From NCBI GenBank assembly GCA_001938485.1, contig MQRK01232195.1, positions 1 through 64,000 on the forward strand: DNA of 64,000 bases, read 5' to 3'. Each line of letters starts with the position of its first letter. Within the stretch, counting starts at the first letter, position 1. The notes under the pieces are model-generated. The model ran no database searches. It was not told the origin of the DNA and was given only the letters and a program-made list of their open reading frames with translations. Of this stretch, positions 3,328-48,852 are shown one piece after another. Source of the DNA: Girardia tigrina (taxonomy: Eukaryota). The position numbers were made by a program, and so were the translations under genes.

Positions 3328-3397
3328 ATGACATCTGAAAATAATAATATCAAATTTTCCATTTCGGATTTTATTAAAATTGAAAAGATCGGAGAAG
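3328..3397 (+). CDS. CDK1: Cyclin-dependent kinase 1, exon 1
   Basis: ATG 3328 reads MTSENNNIKFSISDFIKIEKIGEG; GT donor at 3398; 60-nt intron (contains in-frame TGA) ends with AG at 3457. Confidence 0.9.
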
Positions 3398-3457
3398 GTA
3401 AAAATTTTCGTCGATGTTGACATGTTTGGAATTAATAAAAATGATTGATTTCCAAAG

Positions 3458-3614
3458 GCACTTACGGAGTCGTTTACAAAGGCAGAAATAAAAAGACCGG
3501 GGATCTTGCTGCACTGAAAAAAATCCGTTTAGAAAACGACGAAGATGGTGTTCCATCTACTGCGATAAGAGAGATCTCCCTCCTCAAAGAACTGATCCAT
3601 CCAAATATCGTCAC
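3458..3614 (+). CDS. CDK1: Cyclin-dependent kinase 1, exon 2
   Basis: (G)[51 protein letters not shown]: Gly-loop with T14/Y15 equivalents and perfect PSTAIRE; GT at 3615. Confidence 0.95.
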
Positions 3615-5591
3615 GTAGTTTATGCACAATTAAATGCTGACATAAAATTCCGTTTGTTCGTCCAAACTAAAATTAAGTTTCTTATTTTGCCTATATTTCT
3701 GGTGTAAAATGATATTCTAAAATTAAAATTCTTTTTAAGGAATAATGTATTCGGTTGATAAGAAAGTTCTTATGCTTTTTATAAATGCTAAGGTTTTTCA
3801 AATTTTAAAGTGAAAGTTGAAAAATTCAAAAGGTGGTTGAAGAAGGTTACACGTTATCTTATTAGTATTAACAAAATCAATATGATTTTTCGAACATTTA
3901 TTAATATCACAAATCAAATTGTTATTTCAACAATTATTCAAACCACTTTCGCTATTCGATATTCTTTCTTGATTACTATTTCTTAGATTCATCCTAATTT
4001 TTGAAAACAATGTAAAATATTTATATTATTAATTAATTATCAAATTTCTAATTGGTTAAAATCAAATCTAAACATTAAAAAACTAGAATTAAATTAGTAT
4101 ATTAAGATTTTAAATTACATCAAAAATTAAAATTTTAAGTATTACTTTTAAATTATTTATTATTATTTTAAATTATTTATTAAATTATTATATTTATATT
4201 TAATAACTTTTAAATTATTTAAATAACTATACTTTAAAATTAAATTATTTTCAATTATTAAGAATCAAAGAAAATACCAAAGAAATCCAAATTAACATAC
4301 AACATTCAAAATATAAAACAAAAAAACAATTCAAAACATTCGTTACAGTCACAATATTGATTTCATTGCATAGCTCGCTCTCACTAAGGACTTCTACACA
4401 AAGAGATTTCTTTATCAAAATCGGTGATTCAAGCGCTTAGTCTTTACAAATTCAAGTCAGTATTAAATGCTTCAGAATCAACTTTGTAGAAAAAACCTTA
4501 TCATTTGGAAATGCCCCACATTGTTTGTAACGCTTTCGATCAGGTCGACTGTCGGATTTTGATGACGAAAGATTGCATCAACTTGATATAGAAGACTCAC
4601 ATGTTAATAAATAAATATGATGATGATTATTTTAATTAGTTTTGGTGATTCTTCATTAATACATAAGCTCTTGTTAATAAATACTTTTTTGTTTCACTTG
4701 TTTGATTAATCAAAAATTCCAAGTACTTTCTTATAAACCCAATACTACCTCTATTCAAAAATGATTGCTTCATTTGACATTTTTTGCTTATAGAGATTTT
4801 AAATATTTTGAACCGTCAGATTATTCAGGCAATTTTAAAATGTTAATAACAACTTCAAAATTCAATTAATCTATATTAATGAATAAATATATAATAATAT
4901 TTTAATAAAAATATTTTACATCTATTAGAAAGCGATTAAAAATATTTTAATAGTATATTATAACGTCAAGATTTATTTAATCATAAATAATATATTTAAA
5001 ATAATGACAGGTATTTTCGAAAATAATTTAAAATTATTTTAGTTAAAAATCATAATTTAAATTCTTTCAAATAATTAGAGATTTAGAAATTGAATTAAAA
5101 CATTTGTCAATCTAGAACTATGTCTAACTACGAAAGTTTTGTAGAGAATTGTCGTGGATGCAATTCGAGTTGTGATGTAAATAAAAGTATTTGAAATCAT
5201 ATTAGTGTTCTTAATTGTCTGTACATCAATAATGTATATCGTAAATCAGAATCAAGAATTCTTACTTTAAAATAAAAATTTTAATATAAAAAAATTAATA
5301 TAATATTAACAATATTTAATATTTATATTTAATATTTTTATATTTATTAATATTTAATATTTAATATAAAAAATTTAATATAAAAATTTTACTCTTCTGT
5401 CAATACAGTATTTAATCCTTAATACGGATACGGAGATAACGGTATGTATCTTTAACCATTCATAAGACAGAAAAAAATTTGCACTTAAGTTCGTGTGATT
5501 AAAATTGACCCAATAATTTTATGATTGAAATTATATACAAAACATGAAACAGATAGCATCAAGATGTAAACTATTTAATATAAACGTTTAA

Positions 5592-5824
5592 CCCTTAAAT
5601 GCATGATTTTTTATTTTTTCATGAAATATTTTTTTCTGTTTATATTATTTTGACGTTTATATCAATATTGGCGGGAGTTTTGACATGTTTTGTTATAATC
5701 GTCATAGACAAAAAATGTACAAAGATAATTTATTTACAAAGGACAGCAATTATTTACACAAACTGGATGCATGGCACTTTCAAACGTTTGTTGTATCATT
5801 TTTGATACAAGATGCATTCAAGGG
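5592..5824. mobile_element. piggyBac-type MITE
   Basis: TTAA TSD on both sides; TIRs CCCTTAAATGCAT / ATGCATTCAAGGG. Confidence 0.85.
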
Positions 5825-5859
5825 TTAATTGTCAATATTCAAGTAATTGACACAGAAAA

Positions 5860-6830
5860 TTTGACATGTTCGGGACAAAAAACTTTCACGATCTTTGACG
5901 GATATACATGCTTTTTTGTTTTATCTCTAGGCCATTTATCACAACTATAAAATTTTTTCAGAACTTCAGTTTTTCTCTGTACCTTTGAACTATTTTGCTT
6001 TTGTTAAATGATTACTCAAGGTATTTGGTTGAAATCGTAACTTCTGTAAATCTTGGCAAAGGCTTTTCTCATCTTTCATTGGATTATGTCAATCGGTAAT
6101 GAGATTTTTGTGGAGAACGAAAGATTTTATAAGATTCTTCACAACATCGTAAGAAAGATTTGTTGCACGATTATCACCATCATTCTCCTTTTAAAGATAC
6201 TTATTACATTTATTCACATACTTTGATTCTGCATCGTAACACATCCACAATTCGATTTCTCATATGGCGGGTTTAGACGGTAAATACTTAATAAAAACCA
6301 CACCACCATCTAAATGGAGATAACCTTTCATATATTTTCAAATGATAATCAGGCACTATTGTTCGTGCAGGGTTATAACAAATTAATTCCCAGAGTTCAT
6401 TGATTGGAGCCTCTTTGTCGAAACATCACCTTTAATGTCTTGATATCATATCATCAAAACGCAAAAATCTTCTGATAGATTTTATTTTGTTTAATGACGT
6501 CGTTGGTGGAAAATCAATACGCCCATTCCTACTCCATAGTTCCACCGTACCTTCACTTGACGCCCGGCACACACCACGGAGAATAAGTATTCCAAGTGCT
6601 CATTTCTACTGGAGTAATATCCATATATTTCTGATCAGTTCTTTGAGCTTCAAAATTGGTATACTGCATAACTATATCAAAGATTCTTGATAATGGTCTT
6701 GATAAACTAGACCATGAAAGTGTCTACGACGATGTGTTCTTCAGAAACATTATTGAACCTGGCTTTCGTCTAATTCTATTATGTAACAATGTTTGGCATG
6801 AAGCTGCTGAATAAGTGCTCGAATAAGTGA
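5860..6830 (-). mobile_element. Degenerate piggyBac transposase
   Basis: Minus-strand LRFDD and YLPSKPA...IELWMCYDA motifs; many stops and frameshifts. Confidence 0.7.
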
Positions 6831-7141
6831 TTCACTTACAGACATCTAGGCTTTACAATTATACATTGTTATTTACAATTAGCTATGAAATTTCTAGGAC
6901 TGGAATTTCTGGTTATTCAAAAAAGTTATTTAAGAATTATAATTTGGTTTATTAAATTTTATACGAACCTATTTACTAAGTTTAATTCAATAACTATTAT
7001 ATTTTTCCTAACTTAAAATATTAATTAAATTCTCAAATCTAATTTTAATTTAAGAAATAGTTATATGTTACTTCAAACGGGACTTTTGTCACAAGTGAAA
7101 AAATATATATTTTTAAAATCTCCAATTGTGAATATATTCAG

Positions 7142-7433
7142 TTTGAAACAAAGTATGATGCAAGACGGAAAATTGTTTCTCGTATTCGAGTACCTAAATA
7201 TGGATCTGCGGCGGTATCTTGACAATCTGGAGACCAATATGGACGCGATGGTTGTGAAATGTTTTGTTTATCAGATTCTCCAGGGACTATTGTTTTGCCA
7301 CTTGCGCCGGGTCATTCACAGAGATCTTAAACCACAAAATCTGTTGGTTGATTCAACTGGCACGATTATAAAATTGGCAGACTTTGGACTCGCTAGGACC
7401 TTTGGTGTGCCGGTGAAGGCTCTTACGCACGAG
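7142..7433 (+). CDS. CDK1: Cyclin-dependent kinase 1, exon 3
   Basis: AG at 7140-41, phase matches exon 2; [30 protein letters not shown]; GT at 7434. Confidence 0.95.
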
Positions 7434-7752
7434 GTTTATCATAATTATTGGAATTATCAATAACTTTTTAATCTCGTTTTGAATTTTTTTGAATTTATTT
7501 TTTCTATTTTCATGTTTTTACATGATTTTTATTAGTTTTCTAAAATAAATTAAATTAATTTACATTTACAAATAATTAATCTTGATTTTTCTTTTTTATA
7601 TCTATTTACTGTGTAAAAAATTACATTAACAAATTATGTTTTTTTTCTAAAAATCATGACAAAATATTTAAAATATAATTAAGGAATTTAAAAAACGATG
7701 GTAAATTATATTCTTCGTTTAAAAAATCCGAACGCCATTTTGTAAAATACAT

Positions 7753-7800
7753 TGTTATTTATTTCGGCGGATTACCGGCCATCTTCAGACTAAATTAACA
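7753..7800 (-). ncRNA. Degenerate Penelope-type hammerhead ribozyme
   Basis: CUGAAGA-U-GGC(C)GG/UAAU/CCGCC-GAAA with flanking stem I; stem III and cleavage triplet appear deleted. Confidence 0.45.
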
Positions 7801-10800
7801 TTAGTTTTTGACCTTATGAAAATGTTGCAAGGAATGTTTTAACATAGCTCCCAAATGGGTGCCCAGTCATTGATTAATAGATGAAGTGGGCACTCACCTA
7901 GAATATTCCGTGGTGTAGCTCCATCTTCCTCCACCTCCAGATGTAACTGATTTATCGGATAAGTAAACTTTAGAGATAAATTTTATCCTTCTTTATCGCT
8001 CGCTCCCCAATTTTGACTCTTACTTTTTGCAGCACGGCAAATAGACTGATTCATAAACTCATTATTATGATGATAATCACAGTCCCATTTTTATAGATCA
8101 AGTTGTGACTGTGCACGTATACAGTGGTCAACCAGAGTTATTAATTGAAGGGTATCAATACTAAAAGTTATTTCCCGTATGGTTTGAAAAAGATGCATTT
8201 CAGAAAAATAGGTTTCATTTTCACGACATTGTCAATTTTTTATTCTGTAAATCGATTTTATTTTTTAAACGATTGTTACGCATATAAATAGAAACCTTAA
8301 AACATATGTTGGGGCCAGTGAGTTTTTCATTCACCTCATCCTCGGACCTATTCATTGCACCGGCACCGTGGTGAGCAAAGGAAAAACTCTCAGAATCTAA
8401 AAAACTAAAAATAAAATATTATAATTTATAATTAATTAATTAAAAAAGAGATACTTTTAATTGGTTTTGACCTTTGGATCCTGTCGCTTTGAATATTTTC
8501 TTCTGAGAATTTGATGGCCTGATTTGTTGACGTGGGTTTGATCGGAATTTTGACCATCTCCAGGTTGTTTCGATTTGAGGAATGTTGACTTAGTGATGGT
8601 TGATTTAAGATTGATTGTGAGAATTGTCCGGTTATGTGTTTTGTGAAATTTTTGTGTAAAGGAAAACTGTATAAATTCATCCGAATTTGTGCACCTGATC
8701 AGACTTTTTCATTGAATAAATTTTATTAAAAAAATTTTTTTTTGAACTTAGGTATTTTTTAGATTTTATTTCTTTTTTTTGAAGTTGATGGAGGTTGGTG
8801 AACATCCTCAAGGCTGCCGATCTGTCGATAGATAACGGTAGGGGCTTATAGTTCCTGCCGAAACTATTGACGATCAGGTAGGGAATATGAAAATGATTCA
8901 TCCGAGGTTAAATGAATCATGAAAATGATTCAGGTTTTGAGGTAATTTGATGACTGCCGATCTGTTAATAGATTAACGACAGGTGCATATAGTGCCTGCC
9001 GAGACTATTGATGATCTGGTAGTTTGAGGAAGTCCTTTCCAAGTTTCATTTCTAGAAGACAATTCGTTTCTTTCAGCCTCCTTTTTGTGTATTTGTTTTT
9101 TTAATTTGTTTTTAATTATAATCCACTCATCGTCATTATTCAGCATGAATAGAAAAATTAATGAAAGCAAAGAGCAATGTATAAAACCTCCCACCTATCA
9201 AAATCAATTTTATGACAGAGGAGTTGTTTTACACGATAATAAAAAAAATTACCAAGCTGACTTAATGATTCAATTAGGTCAACTTAATAATCTCAAATAA
9301 AAAAGAATGAATATAATAAATAATCTGTATAATATTAGTAACGAAATTACAATACCGAAACTAACAATAAAACGTATGATTATCACAGTAAGGACAAATA
9401 AAATAAATATAGTTACTTTCCGACCGATAATTAACTAATAACGGAATATTATCTGTCTCTGTAGAAATGAAAGTTTCGGTTTACAATTAATTGGTATTGA
9501 TAAATTTTGCTTGAATAATCACAAGAAGTTATAGAGTTGAAAATTCTTTAGTTGATAATACTTTTTTGTTTTTTTTTTAATTAATAGGTGTTATATCTTT
9601 AACTCGTATGAATCGGATCTTGGATTTAAATTGAACTTGATTTGAACTCGAATTAATGTGAATATGAATTAAATCGGAGGGTAAAATTGAAATATTAGTG
9701 TTGTCGGTGGAATAATGTAATAATGTAGTTGGAGAAGTGGATAAATTAATTTAATTTCGTAGACAGGTAATTAATGCCAATTCGATTATCCAAATATTGA
9801 TTGCAAATTTCAATTAAATTCAAATCGCAATTATTTGGATGATCAAACTAACATAATATATAATTTTCTTTTTTTTGACATTATTTTAAATTTTCTTTAT
9901 TCTTTTTTTGACAGTTAAGTAATTTACTTCTTCAGTAATCTCGTAGACTACTCGACTTAAAGACAAATAAAAACAATGAAATAAAATAAAATAAAATCAC
10001 ATCAACTCATACCACGTCACCAGTGTTGTACAGCCGTATAAGATATGACACACACACACAAAAGAACATAAAAAATCGAAGAATATAAGTACAAACAAAA
10101 CCCGCTTCCTTTAACAAAAGTGAGGTATAACAAGCAACAAAGAGAACTGCTGCTAGAGTTGCAGAAATGGAAAGGAGAATGTGCCAAGCTGAATGACGAA
10201 CTGACGAAGAGGTCAACCGAATTTGAGTACTACAGAAAGCATTCAGTTCCTCTATCAATTCATAAACTGGTGTGGATAAATATTTTTTAGGACAACAAAA
10301 AATAAAGTCTTTACAAAACGAGGTCACTGAGATGAGAATTCAGCAAGAAGGTGATCGAAAAAGTCTCAGACGAGCAACCGGAGTTGATTCTAGTCACAGC
10401 AAACAAGATTGGGTTGATCGGAAAAGAAACCTCTGGTGATGAACCCAAACATTTATGGGTCAATTATGAAAGAAGATATGGCATCATCTTCCTCTGGAGT
10501 GCTCAGCAGATCCCAGAAGTGGCGTGAGCAGAGTAAGCGAAAAGCTCAAATGTTTCAACAGGTCAAGAGTGAGCTGCAAACTGTTTTTAAAACCAGTCGT
10601 ATTGAGGTTGACGTCCAAGATGGAAAGACTGTAATCAGAAATGACATCACTCAAAGAGAGTCTTCTGATTTTGATACCTCTAATCAAATTTCGTTGTTTT
10701 CCCCAACAAATAATTTCCAAGAGACTATAGAACAACAAGAATGGCTGGACCTCAAGTCAAAACTTGAAATTCATAAGGAGAATCGTGACCGTCTACAGTT

Positions 10801-11529
10801 CCGCTCTATCACAACTGGTAAAGGTGAAGAGTTTGTAAATCTATCAGATTTGGATGACTAAAGACGATGGGTGGATTGCTTTTGATTAGCATTTACTTTT
10901 GTTTTCTTGTTATATTTTAATAAAACAATGTCTACATATAATTTGTTCATGTTCTTTTAACTTTAATTTCTGGTTTGAAAATGATAAAATCATGATAAGA
11001 AATATAATAATCAAATCAAAAGAAGCATATTGAGAAAAAATAAGATAATCATTAATTAAATAGAAGTAGCATAAGTCAACTTTCATAGACCTAATATATT
11101 TAAATATAATGTAGAACCCAATAGGTACTTCATCAACTTCACTGGCGAGATCAAAGGGCCAGATGGGGTTGATTGGGTACGATATGGATCACTAATAAGT
11201 GTGAGTTAGAGACACTTAGCGGAGAGACATATCCAGATAATATGTTGGGTCAAATTGCAACACTCACAGTACAAAAATTAATAAAATTAAAATAATATAA
11301 AACCCAACACATATATAAATGAAAAATCATCATTTACATTATACAAAGCCGCGTGAGTTAATGCTAATTCATACACAATTTTATTCCTAAGAATTCACAG
11401 AAAGATCTGGTGAAGAATGCTGTAGAAAGAAAAGAAATTACGGAATAAAATAAATTATAAAACTATTCTTTATGGAATGTCGAGAATTGTCAGAGGTTAT
11501 AATATTTGCAAGTGTTGTTGTTGCCAAAC

Positions 11530-11770
11530 ATTGCTCGAGACTATTACAAGTTAAATGTAAGCCATTCCAAAATTAGAAGAAAATATTAAAAGACTAGAAG
11601 TCTTAAGTTGTAAAATAAGAATCACTACAGTTCAAAGAAAAAGAGACTTGTCTGGGAAAGGTAATACAAGAATTTCACATAGAAGACTGATCCAAGGTTA
11701 TCTTCTCCAATGAAACAAAAATTTATCCCTTTTCTCAAGATAAAAGGATAACGATTAAAGGGAGGAGTAA
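11530..11770 (+). mobile_element. Tc1-like transposase fragment
   Basis: QRKKRLVW...ED*SKVIFSNETKI resembles Tc1 RLxWA...W.KVIFSDE. Confidence 0.6.
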
Positions 11771-12191
11771 TCAAAATCCCCTTGATGTGTACCAAAACGC
11801 ATTAAAATTTACAACTTCAATTTCCAATTATTTATTAAATAATTTGGAAAATGATGATCAGTTAAATAATAATATTAATTAAGAGAATGAAAGGAAAATT
11901 GGATTGCTCTTAATAATAAAACAAGCGAAAAAATGGATTACATAATATTTATATTAAAAAATAAAAGTAGTTTTTTCATTGTCTTTCGTCTAGGGATGAC
12001 TGGTTATCCGTCGAAATTACTAACAAAAAAGTTGTGAATAATGTCATTGTTTTTTTAACTAGCTTATATAATAATATAGTAGAAAAAATATTAATTCATA
12101 TTTCTCAAAAACATACTTTAAAATATTTTAATGTTATTAAATGAATACTTTTCAAGTTTAAGCATGATTTATGATGCTTTATTAATTGTAG

Positions 12192-13237
12192 TACATTAAA
12201 AGAGCCAACTCAAAAGAGCCAAAGTCAAAAGATCCAACAAAAATAATATAAATAACTTGGAAATTTTTGCAATTTAAAGGAATAATTTATTTACTGGTGC
12301 AATTTGAAGGATCATTTTATTTACTTGACCAAATAAATTTTATTAAACAAAATTTTGTTTAAAGGCTACCTTTAAAAGCTACAGGTGCATGTAAGACAGA
12401 ATGATACTGTAGTAAATCCAAAACCACATGATCATGATCACGACGTAGCCAAAATTGAGATTCAAGAAGATAGCAATAACTGGCTTTACAAAGAAACTCA
12501 ATGTCACGATGCATTACGTCAGTTGATTGCAGAAACCTTGGTTGGTATGTCGGAAGCAGCAATGGGAAAGCTTTCGAACCGCTAGTTATACTCGTAATGT
12601 ACATAATACGAGAAAGTAAAATAATTCAAATCCAAGGATTCCATATAGTCTAGCGGATCTTGCAATAATTGCAACTCCTGGTGATTTAAAGAAAACTTTT
12701 GACGGAGCAGATGTTTTGCTCTACAGTAATATCAAAGAAGGAATAAGGATGTTCTCAACCCAGACCAGTCTCAGCTTACTTTCTCAAGCTGTAAACTGGT
12801 ACATGGATGTTAATTTTTGTAGTGACCCAGTCAATTATTATATATAAATTATATATAGTAAATTATATATAAAATTATATATACATTGCAAAGTAAAATC
12901 TATATAATAGGGATAAAAACAGGACGACGCGTTTCGAGATAATAAAAATCCCATCATCAGGTCACAAATTACACTACGCAAGTACACTATATGGNNNNNN
13001 NNNNNNNNNNNNNNNNNNNNNNNNNNNNNNNNNNNNNNNNNNNNNNNNNNNNNNNNNNNNNNNNNNNNNNNNNNNNNNNNNNNNNNNNNNNNNNNNNNNN
13101 NNNNNNNNNNNAATCTCATTCTCGCAAACCAACCATTGGCAGCTATCAATTGCCATTTGAGAAAACGATGTTTTCTCTATCGTTCCGTACTTTACAAGGT
13201 AACGGAGACATATGATAAAGATGACAACTATATAAAG

Positions 13238-13271
<34 letters not shown>

Positions 13272-14220
13272 TTATATATATATAAAACATTCGATAGAAA
13301 CAATCATTAATATTACTGTTTACAATTCTACTATATTGCCTACGGGGAGTTTTCTTATAAAATCAGTTCGTAAAGGAGTTTTCTACAACCCAATTTATCA
13401 ATATTCCCTCTGAAAGTGCTCCTCTTTATGTGATCTATTTTCTCAAAATCTCGTTGTACAACCGAATGATTCTCTGACGTTTCCATCGATATTGTTACAA
13501 CAGAAGATCATTCCTTGAAACCTTTGAACAACAAACACAAATCAAAATCGAGATTTATCTGTGCCATTCTCTCTCGTAAGTGTTTTTTTGTTATATATGT
13601 TTATTTATATTCTGTAAAAATAAAAGTTTTATACATATTTATCTTTATTTTTTTACGTTAAAGGAGTTCATTGAAACACGTTTTCAGTTAGCTCTTTTAC
13701 AATTTTAAGACTGTATACATTATTATACAATTTGTATACAATTTATGAAATACATAATTTATTTGTTCTATTAGTATACTTTCCTTTGTCGAGAATGAAT
13801 AAAGTTACATACAATCGTATGTTTTAAAATTTTTAAAAAATTTTGAAAGATTTCGTCCACAAATAAATATGTCCAACTAAGAGTTTGTACTATTTATGTA
13901 TCGATTCTATATTTCCCATTAGTTACTCATCAAGGATTTATGTTTCCTTTTGACCAGGTGGTTTGGAGAAAGATCCTAACTCTTAATAATATTTGTCAAC
14001 AATATGGCTATGATTACTACTTTAAATTGCCTTTTAAAATGTAATTGCTTTAAAATCCGGGACAACTTTTTGAAACACATGACTATTCCGGAAAATCAGG
14101 GACGGATGGGACGCCTGATTTAAACTGAATTTAGTACCATTTTATTACAATTATTACTGTGCAAATTTTATTCTGTTTTTATTGTTGGCTCTTTTTACTT
14201 AGCTCTTTTTGCATGGAACA
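12192..14220 (+). mobile_element. Mutator (MULE) element remnant, spans an assembly gap
   Basis: TIRs with AAAAGAGCCAA subrepeats at ~12197 and inverted at ~14185; transposase remnants HDH, LLYS...IRMFST...WYMD. Confidence 0.7.
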
Positions 14221-14877
14221 TTTATTAGCAATGCTTCGATAAAAATCCTTTCATAATTTGTGTGTAAATTATTTGAAATAACTTTAAAACCTTTATCATA
14301 ACCATCATAGTGTCTACCTTGATATATTTTAATATGGGTCAAATGTGAACCATTTATTTAGTATGTTCAGCAATTTATTTCTGATTTTACTTACATTTCA
14401 AATTCAAAAAATCAGTTTCTGGTTAAAAGAGTCGTTTTATTTTTGTTAGAGAAAAATTGAATTTTTTTCATTAATTCCTTTTAGTCTATGAACTTCACAG
14501 AAAATAAATTTTATAGGAGCAATAAATATTTATCGTCTCACAATTCTTACAGTAGTCGTTCAATCTAATAAACATTCCGAGATCGAGGAATTCTCTTACA
14601 ATAAGAGATTTATTCTTCAAAATATTAATTAAATTTAATGTTAATATTAATTAAATTGCTAGCAATCCTTTTAATAATTTATATAATATTAATCATCATA
14701 ATTATTTAGTGAAAATAATTATTTTAAATTTGTAAATACGCAAAAAAAATCAGCAATTTATTATTTCAAGCTATTTTGTGTATAAAATTACTTTTTGATA
14801 CAAATATTTGATTTACCTTGTCTTTTATGAGTTCAGAGATTTGTAAAATAGTGTTTATTTTATAGCTATAAATTTAA

Positions 14878-15670
14878 GGTACATATTGTTTTGACGCCGT
14901 TTATTTTGACACAGGCTGTTTTGACCCTAGTTTTAGTTGAATTTTTGATGGAAATGAATCAATTTTTTAATATTTATTTTTATGAATATTTTTAATTTGG
15001 ACGGCTTCAACCCCATTTTTCAAGATTTAATTCTATGAATACTTTTATTTTGATGGTTTTGTAACCATTTTTTAAAATGCAATTTTATGAATATTTTTTA
15101 TTTTTGATAATTTTGAACCTATTTTTTAGTTTAATTCAATTATTTTTTATTTTGATACGGTTTTGACGAGAATGAATAAAGTTATATACAATCGTATGTT
15201 TTAAAAATTTTGAAAGATTTCGTCCACTTACAAATATATGCAGGATTTCCGTCTTGGTCACCTCCAAACCTTTCGTTTGATTGACGATCATTACCTTTTT
15301 TAAAGATACGCGAGGGGTTCAAGGCGTACATTTCAACATTCGGCCTTTCCCTACTCACGTTGTAAGCTTCAATTCGTCTAGCTTTTTATACGAGATCATC
15401 AAAATCTTTGAAGTCTATTAGAACTATCTTCTAGTTTAATTTAATTACTTTTTTATTTTAGATGGTTTTCTATTTTTTTTTATTTGAACTTAATTCGGCA
15501 AGGGATCCAACGCACCACAAAATGCCTAAACGCAATACCGGTTCAGCCGATTAATCGCGAATCTATTGAATTACCAGAATCATATACTCTTTATGAGAAG
15601 TTTCCTAAAAATTTTGAGAAATTCCTATTGGTTGATTCTGGATTATGAGATCGTAATATAATTTCGATCC
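14878..15670 (+). mobile_element. MULE TIR and transposase scraps with an inserted gag-like fragment
   Basis: GTTTTGAC subrepeats; IELPESY...EKFLLVDSG. Confidence 0.45.
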
Positions 15671-15903
15671 AATCCTGATTTTTAAATGTAATTGTAAAAA
15701 ATTATTTCTGATTCTTTTCTGAATTATTAAAAAATATTTTGAAAATAGTATTGCATGTTTTTACTATTTAATGAAATTTCAGTAAATAATAATTTTCTGG
15801 TTTTATATAATGTTACATATCACAATTCTCGTGAAAATATTACTTTTGATCCTCAAGAATTCTGATTTCTGTGAACATTGAATTGATTGGATTTGTTTGA
15901 TAG

Positions 15904-16212
15904 GTCGTTACACTGTGGTATCGAGCACCCGAGATCTTAATGGGGTCCAAGCGATACTCTTGCGCGGTCGATGTATGGAGTGTGGCGTGTATATTTGCTG
16001 AGATGATCACTCGCAAACCACTCTTCCGTGGCGACAGTGAGATTGATCAGATATTCAAGATATTCCATTTGCTTGGTACTCCGACAGAGCGCGCGTGGCC
16101 AGGAGTGACACACCTTGCAAGTTGGAATTCAATGTTGCCCATATGGAGAAGTAACTGTCTTGGATCTGTTCTAAAGGACCAGATGACACCTGATGCACTT
16201 GATTTAATATCT
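15904..16212 (+). CDS. CDK1: Cyclin-dependent kinase 1, exon 4
   Basis: TAG acceptor; [28 protein letters not shown]; GTAAG donor at 16213. Confidence 0.95.
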
Positions 16213-16569
16213 GTAAGGCTTTTATAATTTGTAATTTGTTATCTTATTCTTTTATTTATAAGTAATTATTTTACTTCTATTTTTCCATTATTTTTCTTTT
16301 ATATGTATATATATATATATGTCCATGGAATTTAAAAACCTATTTTTGAAACATTTTTATTCAATCAAATTTCTTCAAACTTTGCACACTTACTTATTTT
16401 CGATTACAATAAATGATAATGTGAAAATTTGAATAAAATATCTATTTAAGGTCTTAGAATTGAAAAAAATGGCCAAATCCAGAGTTCCTAAGCAATATTA
16501 GTTTTTAAATTTAAAAAATTATTTGTTGCTTTAAGAATAGAATTCTTTAGATATTTGAATAATTGATAG

Positions 16570-16890
16570 AAAATACGATCATTTTGATACTGAAATTTAT
16601 CGTAAGAAAACTGATACTGGTTTATACACATCATAAGACATTTTTTGTGACTCTAGATATAAGAAGAATATGATAAAAGGTTGGCTTTGCCGTTCTTGAT
16701 CCCTTTCTTCTACTTTTGCTAAATCTAATAAAAGTATTGAAACATTGAGTAAATTGTTATAATTATATTCTAAGTCTTTTATTGAGAACTCACTCGTTAG
16801 ACTTTGGACAAAATAACTGAAAGAGAACGGATTAAGATTGCTCAGTCTAAAGAGACAATTAATTCGCCTGTGGATAAAGTCGAGGATTAT
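16570..16890 (+). mobile_element. Penelope-like RT C-terminal fragment
   Basis: EIYRKKTDTGLYT...RYKKNMIKGWLCRS*SLSS matches the PLE YRKxTxTGxY motif. Confidence 0.75.
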
Positions 16891-24520: not shown

Positions 24521-25126
24521 AATATTTATTAATAAAATATTTCAAAATCTAATAAATAAATGTGTCAATAAAAAATTTTGTTGTTTTAACTCTTGTAAAA
24601 AAGGCAAACATTTGACAAATAAAGAATTTAATTGCTTCTTCATTTTTCTTCACTGCATGTTGATTTTATGAGTTTTATAAAAGTGCGTATTACTTCAAAC
24701 GAAGTCTGTGATGGATCTAAAATGACGTGGTCGGGTGTTATTACTTTCGGGCGTTTGGGGGAGATTGAGAGCAGCTGCACCGCCGTCCCAGCGGTCACGT
24801 GGGAGATCAGTGATTTTTTATTACTAAAGAATTTAGAAATATGTTTTAAAATTTAAATTCAATCATTGATTTAGAACTTGTAAACTCAAACTGTTAAGAT
24901 TGTCTATGTTTTTATTTGTAAAGCCTTCGAAATATAAAAGAAAATAATATTGAAAAACAAAAAAAATCTGTCAAAAAATAAACATTATATGTATTTGACG
25001 CATTGTGTCTCTGAAAAAGGTTTATGCAGAATGACTTCTTACAAACATCAAATTCCAACGTTGTTTGTGCTCTCTTGTTCTACGCATGTGATCTTCCAAA
25101 TTCTTTGCAGTTATGCTCGTAACATA

Positions 25127-26640: not shown

Positions 26641-26649
26641 TATAATACA

Positions 26650-27749: not shown

Positions 27750-27950
27750 CAATACATACCAGTTTCATTCTTAATGACATCTTCAGTTTAATAAAGTAAT
27801 GAATATGAAAATTGTGGATCTAAAAATTACTTTAACATTTTTTATGTTCAACAATTTTACTATAAGTTCGACTGTGTTTTTGGAGTCGTTTGGACAGATT
27901 GATTGACATTCTCCAATATATGTGGCATCGCACCCATTTATATGACTCGT
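27750..27950 (-). mobile_element. Penelope GIY-YIG fragment followed by a degenerate hammerhead
   Basis: GCDATYIGE..NLSKRLQKH; downstream CUGAAGAUGUC...GAAACUGGUA. Confidence 0.6.
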
Positions 27951-31877: not shown

Positions 31878-32075
31878 GACATGCTTCTCTACAATCCACC
31901 AGATAGAATCAATTCTCGAGATGCACTTTTACACTCATATTTCTCTAATCTCAATAAAAGCCAATTACCTGCCAGTGGAGAAGAATATAGAACTTCTCCG
32001 TTTGAAAATCCTCATAAAGCTAGAAACTATTCAATCAAAGAAAACAGTTTAATGGATACTTCTTCAATCAAATGA
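31878..32075 (+). CDS. CDK1: Cyclin-dependent kinase 1, exon 5 (terminal)
   Basis: ttttag acceptor; DMLLYNPPDRINSRDALLHSYF (kinase subdomain XI) then C-terminal tail and TGA; joined CDS 1026 nt. Confidence 0.9.
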   Translation, partial: DMLLYNPPDRINSRDALLHSYFSNLNKSQLPASGEEYRTSPFENPHKARNYSIKENSLMDTSSIK

Positions 32076-32344
32076 CTTTAAAATACGTTATTAGGTGTGT
32101 TCAGTTCTACGTTTTTGTTCGTTCTTTGTGTTTTATTTCAAAGAAAGCTCTGACTTAAAGATTTTTGGTTTTTAAAAATTTATTTAACTTTTGATAATAA
32201 TTGAGTCTCAAAAGTTATGAAATCTTTAAAACATGATCGATTTTTTTAATTGCTGATAATACTTTAAACGTAATTCTTCTATTTTCTGAAATATATTTTT
32301 AATTCATTAATTAAAATATTATTTATATTAAATTTTATATTTTT

Positions 32345-39513: not shown

Positions 39514-39855
39514 GTAAACTATTTAATATATATTTGATATTTCTCTTTTTTATAAATGATAAAATAGTTTAGTTCAGATCCTGTAGATTTCAATTTCTAC
39601 ATGAATAGAAAATATTAGCCCTATTGGGAAAAAATTTTGCTGGAAATTTGAAATTGAAATTTCACTTAAAAACAATCAAATTGTTCCGTAATTAATTATA
39701 AATTAACATTAAATTATTCACATAAATAATTAAAAAATGACGATAAATTATTTTTTAAATTCAAAAAACGTTCGTCATAATGTATTGTAATCAATTTCGA
39801 CGAATCAACAGTTATCATCAGTCTAAATTAACAATGATATATTCGCATTTATATA

Positions 39856-40297
39856 TTAGGTTGGTTGAAAAATAATGGCAGCTTTTGAGCTTTATATTTT
39901 GTTTATCTACTTTGATATGTATATAAGTTTAAATGCATTAGTGTTAGATATTATTTGAAATCTTATGCCTAACTGTATATTCCTATAGCCATTATTAACA
40001 TATTGCTGTTATTTTTTATAATATTTACGGTGCTAAATTAATAATGGAAAAGATTAAAATTCGAGCAATTTTCTTCTACGAATTTAAACTGGGTCGTAAA
40101 GCAGCAGAAACGGCTCGCAATATCAATAAAGCGTTTGGCAATGGAACAGCTTCTGAGCGCACAGTGCAACGAAGGTTCCGAAAATTTTCTGATGGAGATG
40201 AAAACCTTGAAAATAAAGAAGGTCGTGGTCGTCCAGTTGCTGTTAACAACGGCAATTTGAAGACAATGGTGGAAACAGATCCCCGTACAACAAACAC
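39856..40297 (+). mobile_element. mariner element 5' part (TIR plus transposase HTH)
   Basis: TA|TTAGGTTGG TIR; IRAIFFYEFKLGRKAAETARNINKAFG...GRGRP. Confidence 0.9.
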
Positions 40298-40965
40298 GTA
40301 GAAATAGATAAATAGAAATTATTTATCTATTTATCATAATAAATATAAATTGTATATAAATAATAAAAATAAAATTTAATATAAAGATAAACAAAAGAAA
40401 TAAAATAGAAGAAAGTTTATGACGGAAAAGAAAGCATTATATTTTAAAAGGTAAATAAAAATAAATTATATTTAAAGAAGACTATAAAAGGAAAGAGTTT
40501 TAAAAGAAAGTTCGACAAATAAGAACCTTAATTATATATTAAGCGTTAATTAAGAAGATCAAGATAAGCCTTTATCGAATTGATCTTAATTATTCCGAGA
40601 ATTTACCGATTTACATAATTGTGATCTCACGCAGAGATAATTTAATCTAGCAAGAATTATAAAAGGCGTTTGTATTAGAAGTTTGAAAACTTATGGCAGA
40701 ATCAGAAACAAATTGAATTCTATCAAAGTGCGAATTAATATAATTTATATATTTTCTTAATTATATTTTTATATATTTAAAATAATTCGAGTAAGAGAAT
40801 ACTCATCTCGTATTATCCAAAATCCAAAATCAGCTTATAGGATTTAAGTTTTGTTTTAAAATATTTTTGTAATTACTGTAATAAAATGAATAAATATTTA
40901 TAAAGAAATCTTTGATTTTTTACATTTCGTTTTACATTTTATTAAGTCACCTCGATACGCCAACA
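40297..40965 (+). mobile_element. Probable solo LTR, family 2
   Basis: Interrupts the mariner ORF; ends ...GCCAACA; similar to 1843-2665. Confidence 0.5.
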
Positions 40966-41395
40966 TATGTAACCACTCTCGACAGATTTTATTAAGCGCA
41001 GTACTCGACGCAACTCTCCATCTGACATCTACGAATAGTACCAGATTTCAAGTTACCTTCGGGTCTAAGCTGACACGAGTATTCCCCTGACAGTAGCAGC
41101 ATGGTCTATTGGGTATGATTCCTATTTAAAGTCTATTTACACGGAAGATCTCATTCAAGTTCACGCTCAAGGCAAATGAATGTTATGCCGTATAGGCACA
41201 CCATGCATGATGCATCGTCCTCGAGACATTCATTATAATCATAACGTTTATTTTACTTATACATATAACTGAAGTTGATTATTCGTACCAACTATGCTGT
41301 TCGGTTTCGTTAATATATTTTCGTTAAAATAAATTTGTTTAAATATTTTTTTTATAAAAGTAAAGAAAAAAAGGTAAATTTAATTTTAATATTAA

Positions 41396-41399
<4 letters not shown>

Positions 41400-41447
<48 letters not shown>

Positions 41448-41452
41448 GGAGA
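41400..41452. repeat. (TA)n(GA)n microsatellite
   Basis: Seen directly. Confidence 0.95.
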
Positions 41453-41649
41453 GTTCGAATTTGATTTGGAACTACAGAATCTGAAAGATGGAAACATAAT
41501 TTGTCGAAGAATTGAGTGAATTAAGAAAGTAAATAACGAATTATAAAAGAGGGGAAAGTTGTGATTATTAATTTGTTTAAGTATTCTAAAAAGATTGTAA
41601 ATATTAAATAAAATCTACTTGTTGATGTTATGAATCCTGAAGTGAAACC

Positions 41650-42611
41650 TGGAGATTTAACTATGCCAGATTACAATCCTTGTAATTAACCGAATATATC
41701 AAAACAGATTATCCAGTTTGACAACTGTTTGTTCGATAATTACAGAATGGGTGGGATTGTAACTTTCCTGTAATATCATCAAAAATTCCATCAAATTCTC
41801 TTTATTCTGGCTGATACTCCTCAGAAATCATAATTTTATCGTATATCTTGTTTCCCAATTTTACTGATTCACCTTTGCATTCACCGTCAGTATCCATTGT
41901 TCCCTTTCGCAATACTGATTCTCTCATTATTTATCCTACTTTTGCTGCTAACTTCAAATTAGAATCAATTTTTAGTTCTTTAGTTTGAAAAGCTGCTTCA
42001 CAAATTCCTTAGTAGTATTTCCACTGATCTTGGTATTGAATCAATTTTTATAATAGAAGTATTTCAGCTCTTCGAAATCCTGATCCGTGGTACAAGTGAT
42101 ACATAACATTTGTTTCTTCTTTGATTTGTAAAGGATAGGCTTCTGTACCTTCCGCAACATCCATTAATGAATATACTTTACCAAGCTCTGTTTACGAACA
42201 ATCATACGCAACAAGAGATGAAATTGGTACGATGCAGAAAAGAAAAATTTGAATTAGTGCTAACCACCACATTTTTGAATTCACTCTAGAGTGTTTTCCA
42301 TTATTAATTTCCTCATTCATTGTTTGTTCCTTGGTTAACACTTTCTTTCTCACTTTTTTATTCTTTTTAGGCACAATATCTATAAAATTAATACTTGTAT
42401 TTACCTCTGCATTATTTTGAAATATTAAATTATCATCCTTATCTTGTAATTCATTTTTAATTTCAACTTTTAAATTCTCTTTAAGTATACTAGTATTCAC
42501 ATTATCATTAAAATCTTCAACAAAATATACTGTTATTTTATTAATTTCACTTTCATGACATCCATAATCATATAAATTCTTGATCAAAGAGAAGTTGATA
42601 TAAGAAATCAA
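41650..42611 (-). pseudogene. Decayed chuvirus (Jingchuvirales)-like fusion glycoprotein / env-like gene
   Basis: Signal peptide MWWLALIQIFLFCIVPISS then LVAYDCS*TELGKVYSLMDVAE, CEAAF, GTMDTDGECKG, CNYRTNSCQTG, YKDC; several in-frame stops. Confidence 0.7.
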
Positions 42612-42619
42612 TGTGGTTT

Positions 42620-43140
42620 ACCAAGTAATTATGTTTTTGCTGTAAGAACTAAATTCGGTAAAAGATTAACAATAACTGTTTTATTAAATGATAGATATAT
42701 TACAGCTTTAGTTGATACTGGTTCAGCAGTCACAATTGTTGATGAAAAGATGCTTCTGGCATCTGAAAAATTAAATCTGGCACCTTGTATTGAAAGATTA
42801 CAATCAGTTACGGGTCATTATCTCGCTATTGAAGGAACTGTACCAGTGTCAATAAAAATTGGTGGCAAGACTATTACAACAAATGTATTAATTTCAAAAA
42901 GTTGCCCAGAATCATTACTGCTTGGTATGGATGTTTTGCAACAGTTAGAAGGTGTTTCTCTAGATTTAAAAAGCGGAAATTTGGTATCCATACCTGATGG
43001 AAAAATCTTACATAAAGTAACCGATGTGTTTATCAGCGAAAATTTATAAATTCCTTATCAAGCAGAATTAGTATATCATGCAGATGTAGTCAGTCACATC
43101 AAAGGAAATCTACTTTTTCAACCAAATGAAGAGTTTATAT
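42620..43140 (+). mobile_element. LTR-retrotransposon aspartic protease fragment
   Basis: ALVDTGSAVTIV...LLLGMDVL. Confidence 0.85.
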
Positions 43141-44137
43141 CAATTTTTAACAAATTTTTTAAGGTAAATTAAAACAATTATTTATTTTAGCCAAATATTA
43201 TATTGAATGTTAAGTCAATTAAGGTAGACTTTAAAATATTCTAATTAATTGAATATTAAGAATTTAATAATATTTGCTTTTAACTTTATTCATTTTACTG
43301 TTCGAAAATCGTAAAAATACATGATCATTTTGTAGTCTTAATATTTTTGAAGAATATATGTTACTTATTACTATTATATATTTTGTTTTAATGGACGGTC
43401 AGAAATTCGCGATTTCTTTCAAGGGGTTTTGTTTTAACAGTATAACGTTTTTGAAAAATCTCTTTTAACTTTTATATTTTGAAAAGGTGTAATGATAACT
43501 TATTGATATTAATATTATTATTGTTTAACTGTCGTCTAAATATCGATGACGATATTTTTTATTGGGGAGAGATTTGTTAGGATTTTGGAAAATGCATATG
43601 AACACTTCTTGATAAAATGTTATATAAGTAAAAATTTAAAATAATTCTTTTGGTAAAATTATTAATTTCAAACAAAATAATATTTAGTTTAACAAAACTT
43701 GGAATTAAAAATTATAAATGTTTGTTTTACTTCATCAAAAATTATAAATATTTTAGTCTTTGTTTTATCTCATCATTTTTCAAGAAATTTACTAAAAGAA
43801 GAAGTCTCTGTAACAAGTAACGTAAATACAAAATTTATTTTATTTTTATTTTATTCTTTTAAAATATTGTTAAACCATAAGTATCCTGTATGGGAGAAAA
43901 AAGTTTATTCTAAAAAGTACAATATCGTTCGTTTTGGGAGATTCACAGTCTTTACTGTAATCTGTTAACTCGCACGAAAGTATTGATTTGTGTTGGTATT
44001 CTGTCATCAAGAATTGAATTATTATTATTATTTTTGAATTGTTAATTTTTGTTATTTGAAATAAAGTTTTATAAAAGAATTTGTGTTCATTATTCATATA
44101 TTTATATTGGAAATCCTTTCTGATTAATGGGAGTCAG

Positions 44138-44240
44138 ATCAAAGATTAAAGATTTCAGATTAAAGATTACTGATTAAAGATTATTGATTAAAGAATAAAG
44201 AATAGAGATTTACGATTAAAGATTAAGATTTAAGATTTGT
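44138..44240 (+). repeat. Degenerate 7-bp minisatellite (GATTAAA)n
   Basis: Seen directly. Confidence 0.8.
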
Positions 44241-44709
44241 GTTTTAAAAGTAAATAATTATATTAAAGATAATTTAATACCAAACAAAGTGATTGATTAA
44301 TCCAGCGCGGCCGTCGAGTGTAGAGGTACGGCCTCCGTATTCGACCAATCGGAACCGTGTGAGCGCCATAATTTGATATCGATCAATCGAGTAGCAGAAA
44401 TCGACCGACAATAAATCGACAACGGTCGGTGGCGGCTTGTTGTTGACAATTTACGTTAAATAATGACGATAGCGCTTGATGGCATCGTAAGTAATGTTTT
44501 TTAAAGGTTAAATAAAGAACATAAGAAAAAAAACAAAAATTTCGAAATATCGCAAAAATTTATTGATTAATTAAAAAATGATATTTCAATGATATTATTT
44601 ACATTTATTTTTTTATATAGTAAGATATGTGATTTTTGATGTAAATAATAATATTAGTATTTTTATGATAATAACGATTTTTTTTATTGTTAGTTTTTTT
44701 ATTTAATTA

Positions 44710-47368
44710 AAAGTGGTCCCTACAAATGGTAATTATGGAAAAATTCAAAGACAACCCAAAGTCTGACAAATGTCATAAAATAAAGAAAACAGAAATGAAA
44801 AAATTAATAGTTTAACTTGAGCTGGTTTTTGAAGATATGTGCGAGGAATATATCAAATTCTGGGCCAATGATTTAGACTTCTGCTTTAAAATTTACCCAA
44901 GAAAAAGAAAGAATCAATTTTTTGCATCTAGTGGATGACTGGACAGTTTCAAAACATCACACAATATCAAAACGAAAACTATCTGCTGCGAATTCGCTGA
45001 TGTTGATGCAAATGTTGTTGCTAATTGGAAAAAGAAATTGGTGTAACTATGTACAGGATATGATAAGATAGACATTTATAATGCTGATGAAACGTCACTT
45101 GCGTGACGAATATTTTAAATTGTATGAATCTATTAATGCTGTATGTTGATTTGAATATTTTGAACCTAGAATGGTTATTCTCCTACGAGATGGAAATGTT
45201 TATTTATTATAATTACACTGATTGACAATTCGAACATAATTAAAATAATAATTTGATATTTTTAAAATTAACAATTAAAATGAAGTTTAATATTTTTTTA
45301 GAAAAACAAAAAGAAAAGCATTTAAATAGATTTAAATTAAATTCATTTTTAACAATTTAAAAAAAATTATTATTTTGAGTTTTTATAAAGAAATGGTTAA
45401 ACTTATTATTTTTAATTAATATTTTTAGAAATTAAATATTTTAAAAAGATTTAGAAAAATTGTTTGAATAAGCATGATTGAAAATAGAAAATAAAGAATC
45501 AATTATAGCAATATCAAACGGTGGAAAATCTTCCGAGAGCTTTGACGACTCTAAATGTGATAATAATAAAAATTCTAATAAAAACTGTCTCAACAACTTG
45601 TGTACTGAGTATTTTCATATAAAACAATTGCAGCAGCGGATGAAACTGTTATTTTTGTTGTGTGTAAGTAGCATTATTGCCACTTTCATTTTCACTAGAT
45701 TCAAGGTTCATAATTTAACACCAAAATTTTATTAATGACAATAATTCACATAATTAAACAAATTTCTTGTTAATTCATTTATTTCGCCAAAATCAATCTA
45801 TTAAATTTTTCTTTCTCTTCAATTTGTAAAATTTAATAAATTTTAAAACTTAAAATTAATAGAATTAATTTTTAAATTATAAATAAAACTTTTTATAAAA
45901 TTTTATCCTAAAACTAATTAATTTAAATTTATCCTGTCTTTTATTTAAAAAATTATTTTCTGATTTATTATAAAATTTAATCCGTTTTTATTTATTTTAA
46001 AATTCTTATTTCAAAACTTTTATTAAAATATAACAATTGTTTTTACTATTGTTTTTAATTGTTTTTACATTTTTAATTTTTAAATAAGTATTTAATTTTT
46101 GATGGTTTTCTTTATAAGATCATTTTTAATTTTAAAATATTTGAATTTATTTACTTTTTTTTAAACTTTCAAATTAAAAAAATAAGAAACTATTTGGCGA
46201 AATGCAAATTAAAATTAACTCCTCACAATGTTAATTTGCTAAGAGGGAAAATTTTAAACCACTATGATTGGGAAAGCTCAAGACCAAGATGTTTCGTGAA
46301 TATCAAGATTAAGAATTTTCTTGTCACCTGGAAACACAGCAAGAAGAGCTCTATAAAAATTGCAATATATTATACTTGGGTTAAGGTCTTCAATGATTAT
46401 ATTCTTAATATTCTTCCGTTCATTGGCAAATGTTTAACGCACCTAAGTTTGGTATTATCAAATGTCAAGATTACTTTTTGCCACCAAACATAACTCCTGA
46501 AATTCAACCGTTAGATCAAGGAGTTATTTGTTGATTGAAAAAAAGAATACCGCAAACTGTTCCTAAAGTCTATTGTAGTGTAAACTGGGAATCACAATTC
46601 AAGTATACAAATTGGTCAAAGCGATCTCCGTTTTGGATTCGTGTACTAGATTTCTGAAGCTTAGCAGAAAGGGAATCCTGGTAATATAAAAACACTTTAT
46701 GAAGTCCGCTTTTTCGGATCAAGAATTAAACTATGCACGCGAGTTGTAAGATGAAGAATCAAAGCAAGAAATCCTTGACACAACAGGGATTACTTTGGGA
46801 ATTCAATGTTTAGTGAATGACAATGATTTGATTGGATTTGACGATTATTCCGAATTTTTCGAGAATTGCAGTGAGGAAAATAGTTTTCAGTTGGTACTGG
46901 ATGAAATTCGGGTAATCTATAAAAGGTATTTCGGTTGAAGTAGCTTACAAGATTGAATCTTAGGTTGCAGGTGAGGCTAAAAGTGAAAAAGTGCCATCCA
47001 TAAATGAAGTTTTGGATATGATAAAGAAACTAAAATTTGTAGCCTTGCAGGAAAAATCCGAAGAGATAGGGTCCGGAAATGCTTAGGAAAGGAAAAACAA
47101 AAAGAAGCAAACTTTAATCACAAGCTAGTTAAAAAAAAGACTTATAAAACATAAATCGTACTGTTGACTGATGACGCTGATGTTGTTGGTTGACTCTTAA
47201 ACGTGAGAGATTGAAGATTAATAATAAATATATTTTTGTTCATACTTTGATCATATTTACAACTTTTAGTAGTTACAACGATGATTTGCGTGTCATATGT
47301 TTGGCACCCGTATAAGTAGGCCACCTTTTGACTCCACGACCGGTGTCAAACTTAGACAAGTAGCACTG
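44710..47368 (+). mobile_element. Tigger/pogo element, decayed, interrupted by a family-1 LTR (~45100-45590) and AT-rich DNA
   Basis: FASSG*LDSFK, IYNADETSL, IQPLDQGVI; 3' TIR ...CACTG|TA. Confidence 0.8.
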
Positions 47369-48852
47369 TAGTTTTACTTTCATTACAAAAACCTATTTTT
47401 CAAGTTTTTCGTGTGTTGAGTGTTTAATGTGTTTGTTAAAATAAATAAAGAACGCACAATAGTTTTTGTTTTATAAAATATATTTCTATATTACAATTTA
47501 ATTACAAAAATGATATTTGTATGTAAGGAGTGATATTTGGTTGGCCCCTGACCGATTTTATATTTATGGTCTGAGAGCCTTTAGCGACAACTCAGAAATG
47601 GCTAAATATTTTAAGGTTTAGTCTCACACTTTGCAGTGTGTTTATATAAAAGATATATACTTTTTAATAATAATTATTTTTAAATAACTTTTAATAATTG
47701 TTTTTAAATAATAATCGTTTTCTATTAATTACTTATTTCTTCTCTATGAGTTGATATAGATAGCACTATTACAGTGTGGTTTAATAATCTTCGTTTCTCT
47801 TTTCTATCCGAATTCGATCACTTAATTTATAGCGATACTTTATACTCCAGGAGGTGATCGTTTTTGAATAGTTAATATAGAATCAACGCTGGAGGTAGAT
47901 TTGTTTTCAGGTGGAACTTAGAAATCTTCAAACAAACTTTTAACTCTAATTAACTCCAATTTATAATGACCTTTTATACTGGTCATTTATTAATTAATTG
48001 ATTTTATTTTTTAATTTAAATTTATTATTTATTATTTTCTTTTAAATATTTATTTTTCTTATTCTTTTGTTTATTTAGACTTTTCTTAATATCTCGTTTA
48101 TTTATATAAAATATATAATTTAAAGGATTAAAATCATAAACATTTTCAGTTTATAAGAAATTTAAAAAATAATGGCAAAATTTTATAATTAAGAACGCCA
48201 TTAAAATCAAATTTTATTTTCAGTTTATGTTTTCAATTTCAAACAATTAAACAATTATCAAAATATTATTAAAATATAACTAAATACATATTATACATTT
48301 TAAAGTATTCCCTCAACACGTATATTAGAACTCTCAGATCTATTCAAGAGGACTTCTACGAATTTTTCAAATGGATAATACTCCTGTCATAATGCTTGCT
48401 TTGTTCAGCAATTTTTTTGTAACCAACAATGTTGAAACCATGAACTGACCAACTTAGAGGCCAAACCTGACTCTGATTTTAAGTGTGTGATCTGTTCTAA
48501 AACAGAATTTAGTCTTATCTTAATTAAATAAGTAAGAACTCTTTGAAACTGTGCAGTAAATTCGGAGAAATTCAGCTATACTAGTTAATGCTTATTTTAA
48601 AGTATATTAAACATGTTAGTGTCACCTCAATGCCAAAGGCAATTACCCCCAATTATGACTCCGATTATGGGTTAATTTATAATTAATTTTGTAAAATTAA
48701 AATTTTTAAATGAAATTTCAATTTCAAATTTTCATCAAACTTTTTAAAGTATATTTTCTTGTAAGATATATTTTTTTATATTCATCAGACTTGAATCGGC
48801 AGGAGACGAATAGAACTATACTCTTGTGAAATATTGCAACTATTTTTTACAG

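What the first reader, a model, noticed from the sequence alone, without database searches (positions are those of the whole stretch)
3615..7141. CDK1 intron 2 ends are also complementary, with an unrelated sequence
Seen: TGACATAAAATTCCGTTTG (3638-3656) pairs with CAAACGGGACTTTTGTCA (7074-7091) with one G-U, one mismatch and one bulge. CACAATT (3625-31) pairs with AATTGTG (7124-30), and 3664-3680 with ~7035-7051. The blocks are nested and colinear, and the outermost lies about 10 nt from each splice site. The donor (GTAGTT) is weak. The sequence shares nothing obvious with the LicD arms, which argues for independent per-intron stems rather than one TE family.
Basis: partly seen in the sequence, partly recalled or inferred. 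Interest (0 to 1): 0.8.

Follow-up and report, generated by a model that had tools for sequence, protein, structure and literature searches.

The report
Self-pairing ends of long flatworm introns
The two ends of this 3.5-kb intron in a flatworm CDK1 gene can base-pair, and about a quarter of the long introns sampled in this genome show the same trait, each with its own sequence, which may help a splicing machinery tuned to ~47-nt introns cope with introns swollen by transposons.

Summary
The pairings are at the stated coordinates. The 18-bp core (3638-3656 / 7074-7091) beats shuffles (p 0.004-0.015). It is only in the top 1-9% of pairings between ends of unrelated real introns, and it is not recovered when exon flanks or the whole intron are folded, so this intron alone is a modest case (~70% real).

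The trait itself is real in this genome. Of 33 long introns delimited by protein homology and not chosen for pairing, 7-10 pair with their own far end in the top 5% (1.7 expected; permutation p<1e-4). The excess is absent in direct, mirror, inward-shifted and across-exon controls, and in 0.3-1.5 kb introns.

The CDK1 paralogue has an unrelated stem at the same intron with similar geometry. Another flatworm's orthologous intron is 82 nt. Six of seven arms tested are single-locus; one is a high-copy repeat.

Best reading: yeast-type 'zipper' stems, possibly seeded by transposon inverted repeats. Function is unshown; neutral relics remain possible, and G.U bias is only suggestive. The scan noted similar arms before (LicD here; another contig, unchecked).

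The parts
3328..3397 (+). CDK1 exon 1
   Evidence: spliced model, 341 aa without stops
3398..3457 (+). CDK1 intron 1, 60 nt, short class
3458..3614 (+). CDK1 exon 2
3615..7141 (+). CDK1 intron 2, 3,527 nt (82 nt in the orthologue L048)
3625..3631 (+). outer 7-bp helix, 5' strand; pairs with 7124-7130; weak
3638..3656 (+). core helix, 5' arm (+24 to +42); single-locus
3664..3676 (+). inner A/T-only block (partner about 7035-7047); not significant
3859..4189 (+). high-copy interspersed repeat inside the intron (2,710 candidates, about 84% identity)
4796..5219 (.). fragments of other repeats, also found near window 31.2-31.3 kb and 33.9-34.2 kb
5588..5828 (.). small element with TTAA flanks and about 13-nt terminal inverted repeats (piggyBac-type MITE by anatomy)
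   Evidence: sequence
6090..6700 (-). decayed coding remnant with many stops; looks piggyBac-transposase-like by eye, but stop-free pieces gave no Pfam hit
7074..7091 (+). core helix, 3' arm (-68 to -51); no family excess in the genome
7092..7123 (+). stretch between core and outer helix; presumed branch-point region, not mapped
   Evidence: inference from sequence
7124..7130 (+). outer 7-bp helix, 3' strand
7142..7433 (+). CDK1 exon 3 (Pkinase)
15904..16212 (+). CDK1 exon 4; intron 3 (7434-15903) has no detectable end stem
31878..32076 (+). CDK1 exon 5 region; intron 4 (16213-31877) weak or no end stem
39514..48852 (+). LicD-family gene intron with a much stronger end stem (about 145 nt, +51..+194 / -34..-182); unrelated sequence; arm nearly single-locus

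Best explanation
The CDK1 intron 2 helix is one instance of a genome-wide minority class of intron-bridging ('zipper'-like) stems. SHOWN: short introns here cluster at 41-60 nt (mode 47) with weak signals. This intron is 82 nt in another flatworm, and here it is 3.5 kb and holds transposon-derived sequence. Long introns pair with their own far end more often than chance, each with unrelated sequence, and strong stems sit closer to the splice sites than chance matches do. INFERRED: closing the helix loops out about 3.4 kb and leaves about 73 nt outside, close to short-intron size. This would bring U1 at the donor near the branch region and help cross-intron definition. The arms may start as terminal inverted repeats or inverted copies of an early insertion (one clear case) and then be kept paired as they diverge. 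The stem would be an aid, not a requirement, since about three quarters of long introns lack a detectable one.
For: Enrichment in 25 independent long introns. Replication in 8 more, 2 of them strong. Over all 33, 7-10 fall in the top 5%, binomial p 1e-3 to 3e-6, and 6-7 of 31 would still give p<0.004. Direct, mirror, parallel-complement and 300/500-nt inward controls are null at 70-120 nt windows. Across-exon pairs give mean z about 0.1 against 1.4-1.5 for own ends, and 0 of 12 introns of 0.3-1.5 kb reach z>2. Paralogue CDK1b intron 2 has an unrelated stem, rank 0.023 by duplex energy, leaving 70 nt outside against 73 here. Strong cognate stems hug the splice sites (median about 92 nt outside against 151; p 0.013). 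Arms are single-locus in 6 of 7 tests. Short-intron sizes. Precedent: yeast zipper stems (PMC12350175) and fish AC/GT bridging introns (PMC4691745).
Against: The helix is small (about -17 kcal/mol, matched by random sites in 64 kb). With exon flanks, or folding the whole intron, both arms prefer local or exonic partners. Whole-intron MFE recovered an end-to-end helix in only 3 of 17 introns, not in CDK1 intron 2 nor in four other strong cases, although MFE at 2-4 kb is unreliable. There is no sense-over-antisense advantage (Wilcoxon p 0.25; for this intron the antisense duplex scores better). G.U exceeds A.C in all eight unbiased settings but reaches p 0.02 in only one. No excess among the 10 introns over 4.6 kb, where a bridge should matter most. 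No orthologue with a long intron was obtained, so no compensatory changes were seen.
Confidence: 0.45

Rival explanations
1. Neutral relic. The arms are the decayed terminal inverted repeats (or two inverted copies) of the first element that entered a ~60-nt intron. Later elements nested inside. The ends lie near both splice sites simply because the ancestral intron was short, and the pairing does nothing for splicing.
For: The kinesin intron arm (L042) is a repeat with 711 candidates, and its two arms are 93% identical. The geometry is the same as under the functional model. No significant strand asymmetry. The genome is rich in DNA transposons. A CACAA direct repeat at 3625-29 / 7090-94 would leave a 62-nt intron if it were a target-site duplication, though it is out of register with the helix and expected by chance.
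Against: Six of seven arms have no family in 1.43 Gb. The CDK1 arm has fewer near matches (32) than its reversed control (140). The LicD arms resemble each other more than any other locus. No clean target-site duplication. Several stems are G.U-rich and gapped. 0.3-1.5 kb introns, which should often be one young insertion, show no excess.
Confidence: 0.28
2. For this particular intron the match is chance: an 18-nt complement in A/T-rich DNA, noticed after inspecting several long introns, even though other introns in the genome have real stems.
For: Rank only 0.008-0.085 among non-cognate pairs. p 0.058 against GC-matched natural windows and nothing at 200/200 nt. An interior window of the same intron scores equally. 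Not in the MFE. The window offers four long introns to choose from.
Against: With about 20% of long introns carrying real stems, a rank in this range is more likely real than not (rough posterior about 0.7, inference). The paralogous intron has a stem at nearly the same offsets. The core holds several G-C pairs in 25%-GC DNA (shuffle p 0.004).
Confidence: 0.25

Closest known systems
Yeast zipper stems (RPS17B/RP51B type; PMC12350175, PMC2536676)
   Same: Sequence-unique helix between a segment just after the 5' splice site and a segment before the presumed branch region, in the long class of a bimodal intron set; arms poorly conserved in sequence; present in a fraction of introns.
   Different: Yeast long introns are 400-500 nt; here the loop is 3.4 kb and full of transposon debris. 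Yeast stems are probed in vivo and some tested by mutation; these are only predicted, and the branch point is unmapped.
Fish (AC)m-(GT)n bridging introns (PMC4691745)
   Same: Complementarity across introns and not across exons, close to both splice sites, in an animal, in a minority of introns.
   Different: Fish arms are one shared simple repeat and replace U2AF2 dependence; here each intron has its own non-repetitive arms and U2AF dependence is untested.
Inverted SINE/LINE stems in large vertebrate introns (PMC2773006)
   Same: Proposed shortening of long introns by repeat-derived stems; one case here is repeat-derived.
   Different: Those stems are scattered through the intron and come from abundant families; here the excess is confined to about 150 nt at the ends and is mostly single-copy.
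Introner / transposon-derived structured introns (euglenid non-conventional introns, PMC3935182; introners from own knowledge)
   Same: Pairing brings the intron ends together.
   Different: Those introns are the element itself, often with non-canonical ends. This is an old canonical GT-AG intron at a position shared with paralogues and an orthologue, and the core helix starts 23 and 50 nt inside.

Membership tests
Zipper stem (yeast definition, PMC12350175) | stem of at least 6 bp linking the 5' and 3' parts of the intron | tested here: met
   16 WC + 1 G.U pairs
Zipper stem (yeast definition, PMC12350175) | [quoted passage not shown] | tested here: met
   core begins at +24
Zipper stem (yeast definition, PMC12350175) | ends at least 20 nt before the branch point; total linker 42-85 nt | tested here: inconclusive
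   met (about 48 nt) if the branch A is near -25; no clear branch consensus in 7092-7141 or in short introns
Zipper stem (yeast definition, PMC12350175) | helix is present in the predicted or probed structure with high confidence | tested here: not met
   absent from the fold with exon flanks and from whole-intron MFE; no probing data; prediction at this length is unreliable
Zipper stem (yeast definition, PMC12350175) | affects splicing; rescued by compensatory change | not testable with these tools
   needs minigene or probing experiments
(AC)m-(GT)n bridging introns | AC repeats near the donor and GT repeats near the acceptor | tested here: not met
   no such repeats at either end
(AC)m-(GT)n bridging introns | complementarity across introns, not across exons | tested here: met
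   mean z 1.4-1.5 against about 0.1
DNA transposon terminal inverted repeats | arms belong to a multi-copy family | tested here: not met
   CDK1 arms single-locus; 32 near matches against 140 for the control; very old or short TIRs would be missed
DNA transposon terminal inverted repeats | target-site duplication flush with the arms | tested here: inconclusive
   only an out-of-register 5-mer, at chance level
Known structured RNA (Rfam) hosted in the intron | match at gathering score | tested here: not met
   no hits in 3400-5300 or 5400-7500

The most novel reading that the evidence does not exclude
Planarians keep an intron-definition splicing system built for ~47-nt introns and tolerate transposon-driven expansion to kilobases partly by holding intron-specific, sequence-unique RNA stems at intron ends. 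The stems are domesticated from inverted repeats and restore a near-minimal effective intron length in a fifth to a third of long introns.
Probability: 0.3. Interest if true: 0.75.

Novelty: new variant of a known kind. Interest (0 to 1): 0.55.

Why it matters
How distant splice sites find each other in long introns is an open question, and clear genome-wide cases of RNA bridging are few (yeast zipper stems, fish dinucleotide repeats). Planarian introns are sharply bimodal (about 57 nt against 1-10 kb in Schmidtea, PMC4978528), several related genomes exist, and RNAi and RNA-seq are routine. The claim that end stems license intron expansion could therefore be tested directly. I found no paper reporting such stems in flatworms; that library omits most subscription journals. 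If the stems are neutral relics, they still date the first insertion into an intron.

Tried and rejected
Local scripts did read the intron whole from the window file, for a BLAST against already-held loci and for folding; nothing was reported from those places. The spliced CDK1 model was searched exon by exon only; the joined protein was used only inside scripts. N stretches were left as they are. Protein searches gave one orthologue, and it has a short intron, so compensatory changes could not be tested. The costly representative search was not used. Rejected: a single shared element family; compositional artefact (direct, mirror and parallel controls, double-centred scores; the low-complexity CCT3 case flagged); exon-looping or circular-RNA pairing; piggyBac termini as the source of the core helix (no TTAA flush with it). 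A first G.U/A.C count (46 against 14) was discarded as biased by selection with G.U-friendly scores; the unbiased repeat is only suggestive.

Full report
Setting. The window is contig C232195 of a 1.43-Gb, A/T-rich, repeat-rich animal assembly in 255,254 pieces. From size and gene content I take it for a planarian, probably Girardia tigrina. That is my inference from memory; a preprint gives 1.40-1.88 Gb for that species. The gene is a five-exon CDK1-like kinase of 341 aa without internal stops. Intron 2 runs from 3615 to 7141. Its position and phase are matched by paralogues (4.5 kb in L008, 48 nt in L024) and by an orthologue from another sequencing run, 91% identical over the matched part, where it is 82 nt. 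The interior holds a high-copy repeat, a TTAA-flanked small inverted-repeat element and a decayed coding remnant. So the intron is most likely an old short intron swollen by insertions.

The observation. The core helix 3638-3656 / 7074-7091 is exactly as described. The outer 7-mer pair is present; the inner block is A/T noise. Against dinucleotide shuffles the ends give p 0.015 by duplex energy and p 0.004 by a log-odds alignment that down-weights A-T pairs. Against GC-matched natural windows p is 0.058 and the signal fades with larger windows. Against about 1,200 pairings of unrelated real intron ends it ranks 0.008-0.085. When exon flanks are included, or the whole intron is folded, both arms prefer other partners. 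Taken alone, it is a modest signal. The LicD intron in the same window is far stronger (z -10). CDK1 introns 3 and 4 show little or nothing.

Genome-wide test. I located exons of myosins, CCT chaperonins, SNF transporters, kinesins, tRNA synthetases and CDKs and fetched about 240 kb. Splice sites were fixed from reading frame, model position and junction peptide, without looking at pairing. They are homology-based, not confirmed by RNA reads, and several introns come from the same gene. In 25 introns of 1.5 kb or more, own-end inverted complementarity exceeded permuted pairs in every scoring (p 1e-3 to <1e-4). Direct, mirror and parallel-complement controls were null at 70-120 nt windows, with borderline values (p about 0.03-0.08) at 150 nt. 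Windows moved 300 or 500 nt inward were essentially null. Eight further introns defined afterwards replicated the result through two strong cases. Over all 33, 7-10 fall in the top 5% (binomial p 1e-3 to 3e-6). Pairing across exons is null, and no intron of 0.3-1.5 kb reaches z>2. Neither does any of the ten above 4.6 kb, LicD excluded. The effect is carried by a minority: the median intron is barely shifted in duplex energy.

Anatomy of the class. The arms share no sequence family. The CDK1a, CDK1b, LicD, two myosin and one kinesin arm are single-locus in the assembly. The CDK1 18-mer has fewer near matches than its reversed control. The search tool warns that it can miss common words, and it cannot see an 18-nt family by alignment. 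One kinesin intron has an 82-nt, 93% identical inverted pair that is a high-copy repeat. Strong stems lie nearer the splice sites than chance matches (p 0.013). The CDK1 paralogue, with an unrelated sequence, leaves 70 nt outside its helix against 73 here. Short introns in the same genes are 41-60 nt with a mode of 47 and weak donors and acceptors, in line with the bimodal distribution published for Schmidtea.

Mechanism. The most likely reading is a zipper-like stem that loops out the insertions and presents the spliceosome with a near-short intron (0.45). The enrichment, its position and its length dependence are shown. Formation in vivo and any effect on splicing are inferred. The neutral rival is old terminal inverted repeats of the first insertion (0.28). 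It predicts the same geometry and is demonstrably the origin in one case; the two are not exclusive, since a relic could be kept by selection. The test that would separate them, RNA-strand bias, is only suggestive: G.U exceeds A.C in all eight unbiased settings but is significant in one, and sense and antisense duplex energies do not differ. Whole-intron MFE recovered end pairing in 3 of 17 introns. Chance for this one intron keeps 0.25.

Comparison. It works like yeast zipper stems and like fish AC/GT bridging introns. It is not a member of the latter (no repeats). It meets the positional part of the former's definition but not the requirement of a confidently folded helix, so I do not file it as one. 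Rfam gives nothing. No paper in the searchable library describes such stems in flatworms. Earlier notes of this scan mention the LicD arms, which I tested, and a similar case on another contig, which I did not.

Limits. The joined CDK1 protein was not searched, only its exons. No orthologue with a long intron was found. Verdict: observation confirmed; the genome-level trait is real but partial and its function is unproven; new variant of a known kind; interest 0.55.

Noticed in passing
genome-wide hits to window 7143-7433 and 3460-3612; L003-L007: At least 150 CDK1-like fragments, many with stops and several with exon 2 fused directly to exon 3: a large family of processed or transposon-carried CDK1 pseudogene pieces.
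   Followed up: partly
L013 (C195778:14010-14072 and 15810-15874): Muscle myosin heavy chain has two alternative loop-2 exons in tandem, probably mutually exclusive.
   Followed up: no
L042 (C214754:73872-76413): Kinesin-1 intron bounded by an 82-nt near-perfect inverted pair from a high-copy repeat; identity is highest at the inner end and decays toward the splice sites, the reverse of a typical transposon end. The LicD arms show a similar gradient.
   Followed up: partly
window 3610-3641 and 7072-7147: Each arm has a competing local hairpin that would cover its own splice site (donor and acceptor); the long-range helix and these hairpins exclude each other, a possible switch.
   Followed up: partly
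window 51560-51830: By eye, a fragment of large-subunit rRNA on the minus strand.
   Followed up: no
window 52319-52882: Small cysteine-rich multi-exon gene, possibly Ly6/three-finger-like; last exon has no Pfam hit.
   Followed up: partly
window 17807-24467: CDK1 intron 4 holds a non-LTR element remnant with a restriction-like endonuclease region, Gypsy-type gag/pol remnants and a hAT-like transposase fragment, all identified by eye from ORFs.
   Followed up: no
window 3859-4189 and L008:4810-5125: The same repeat family sits in intron 2 of both CDK1 paralogues in the same orientation; with thousands of copies this is probably coincidence.
   Followed up: yes
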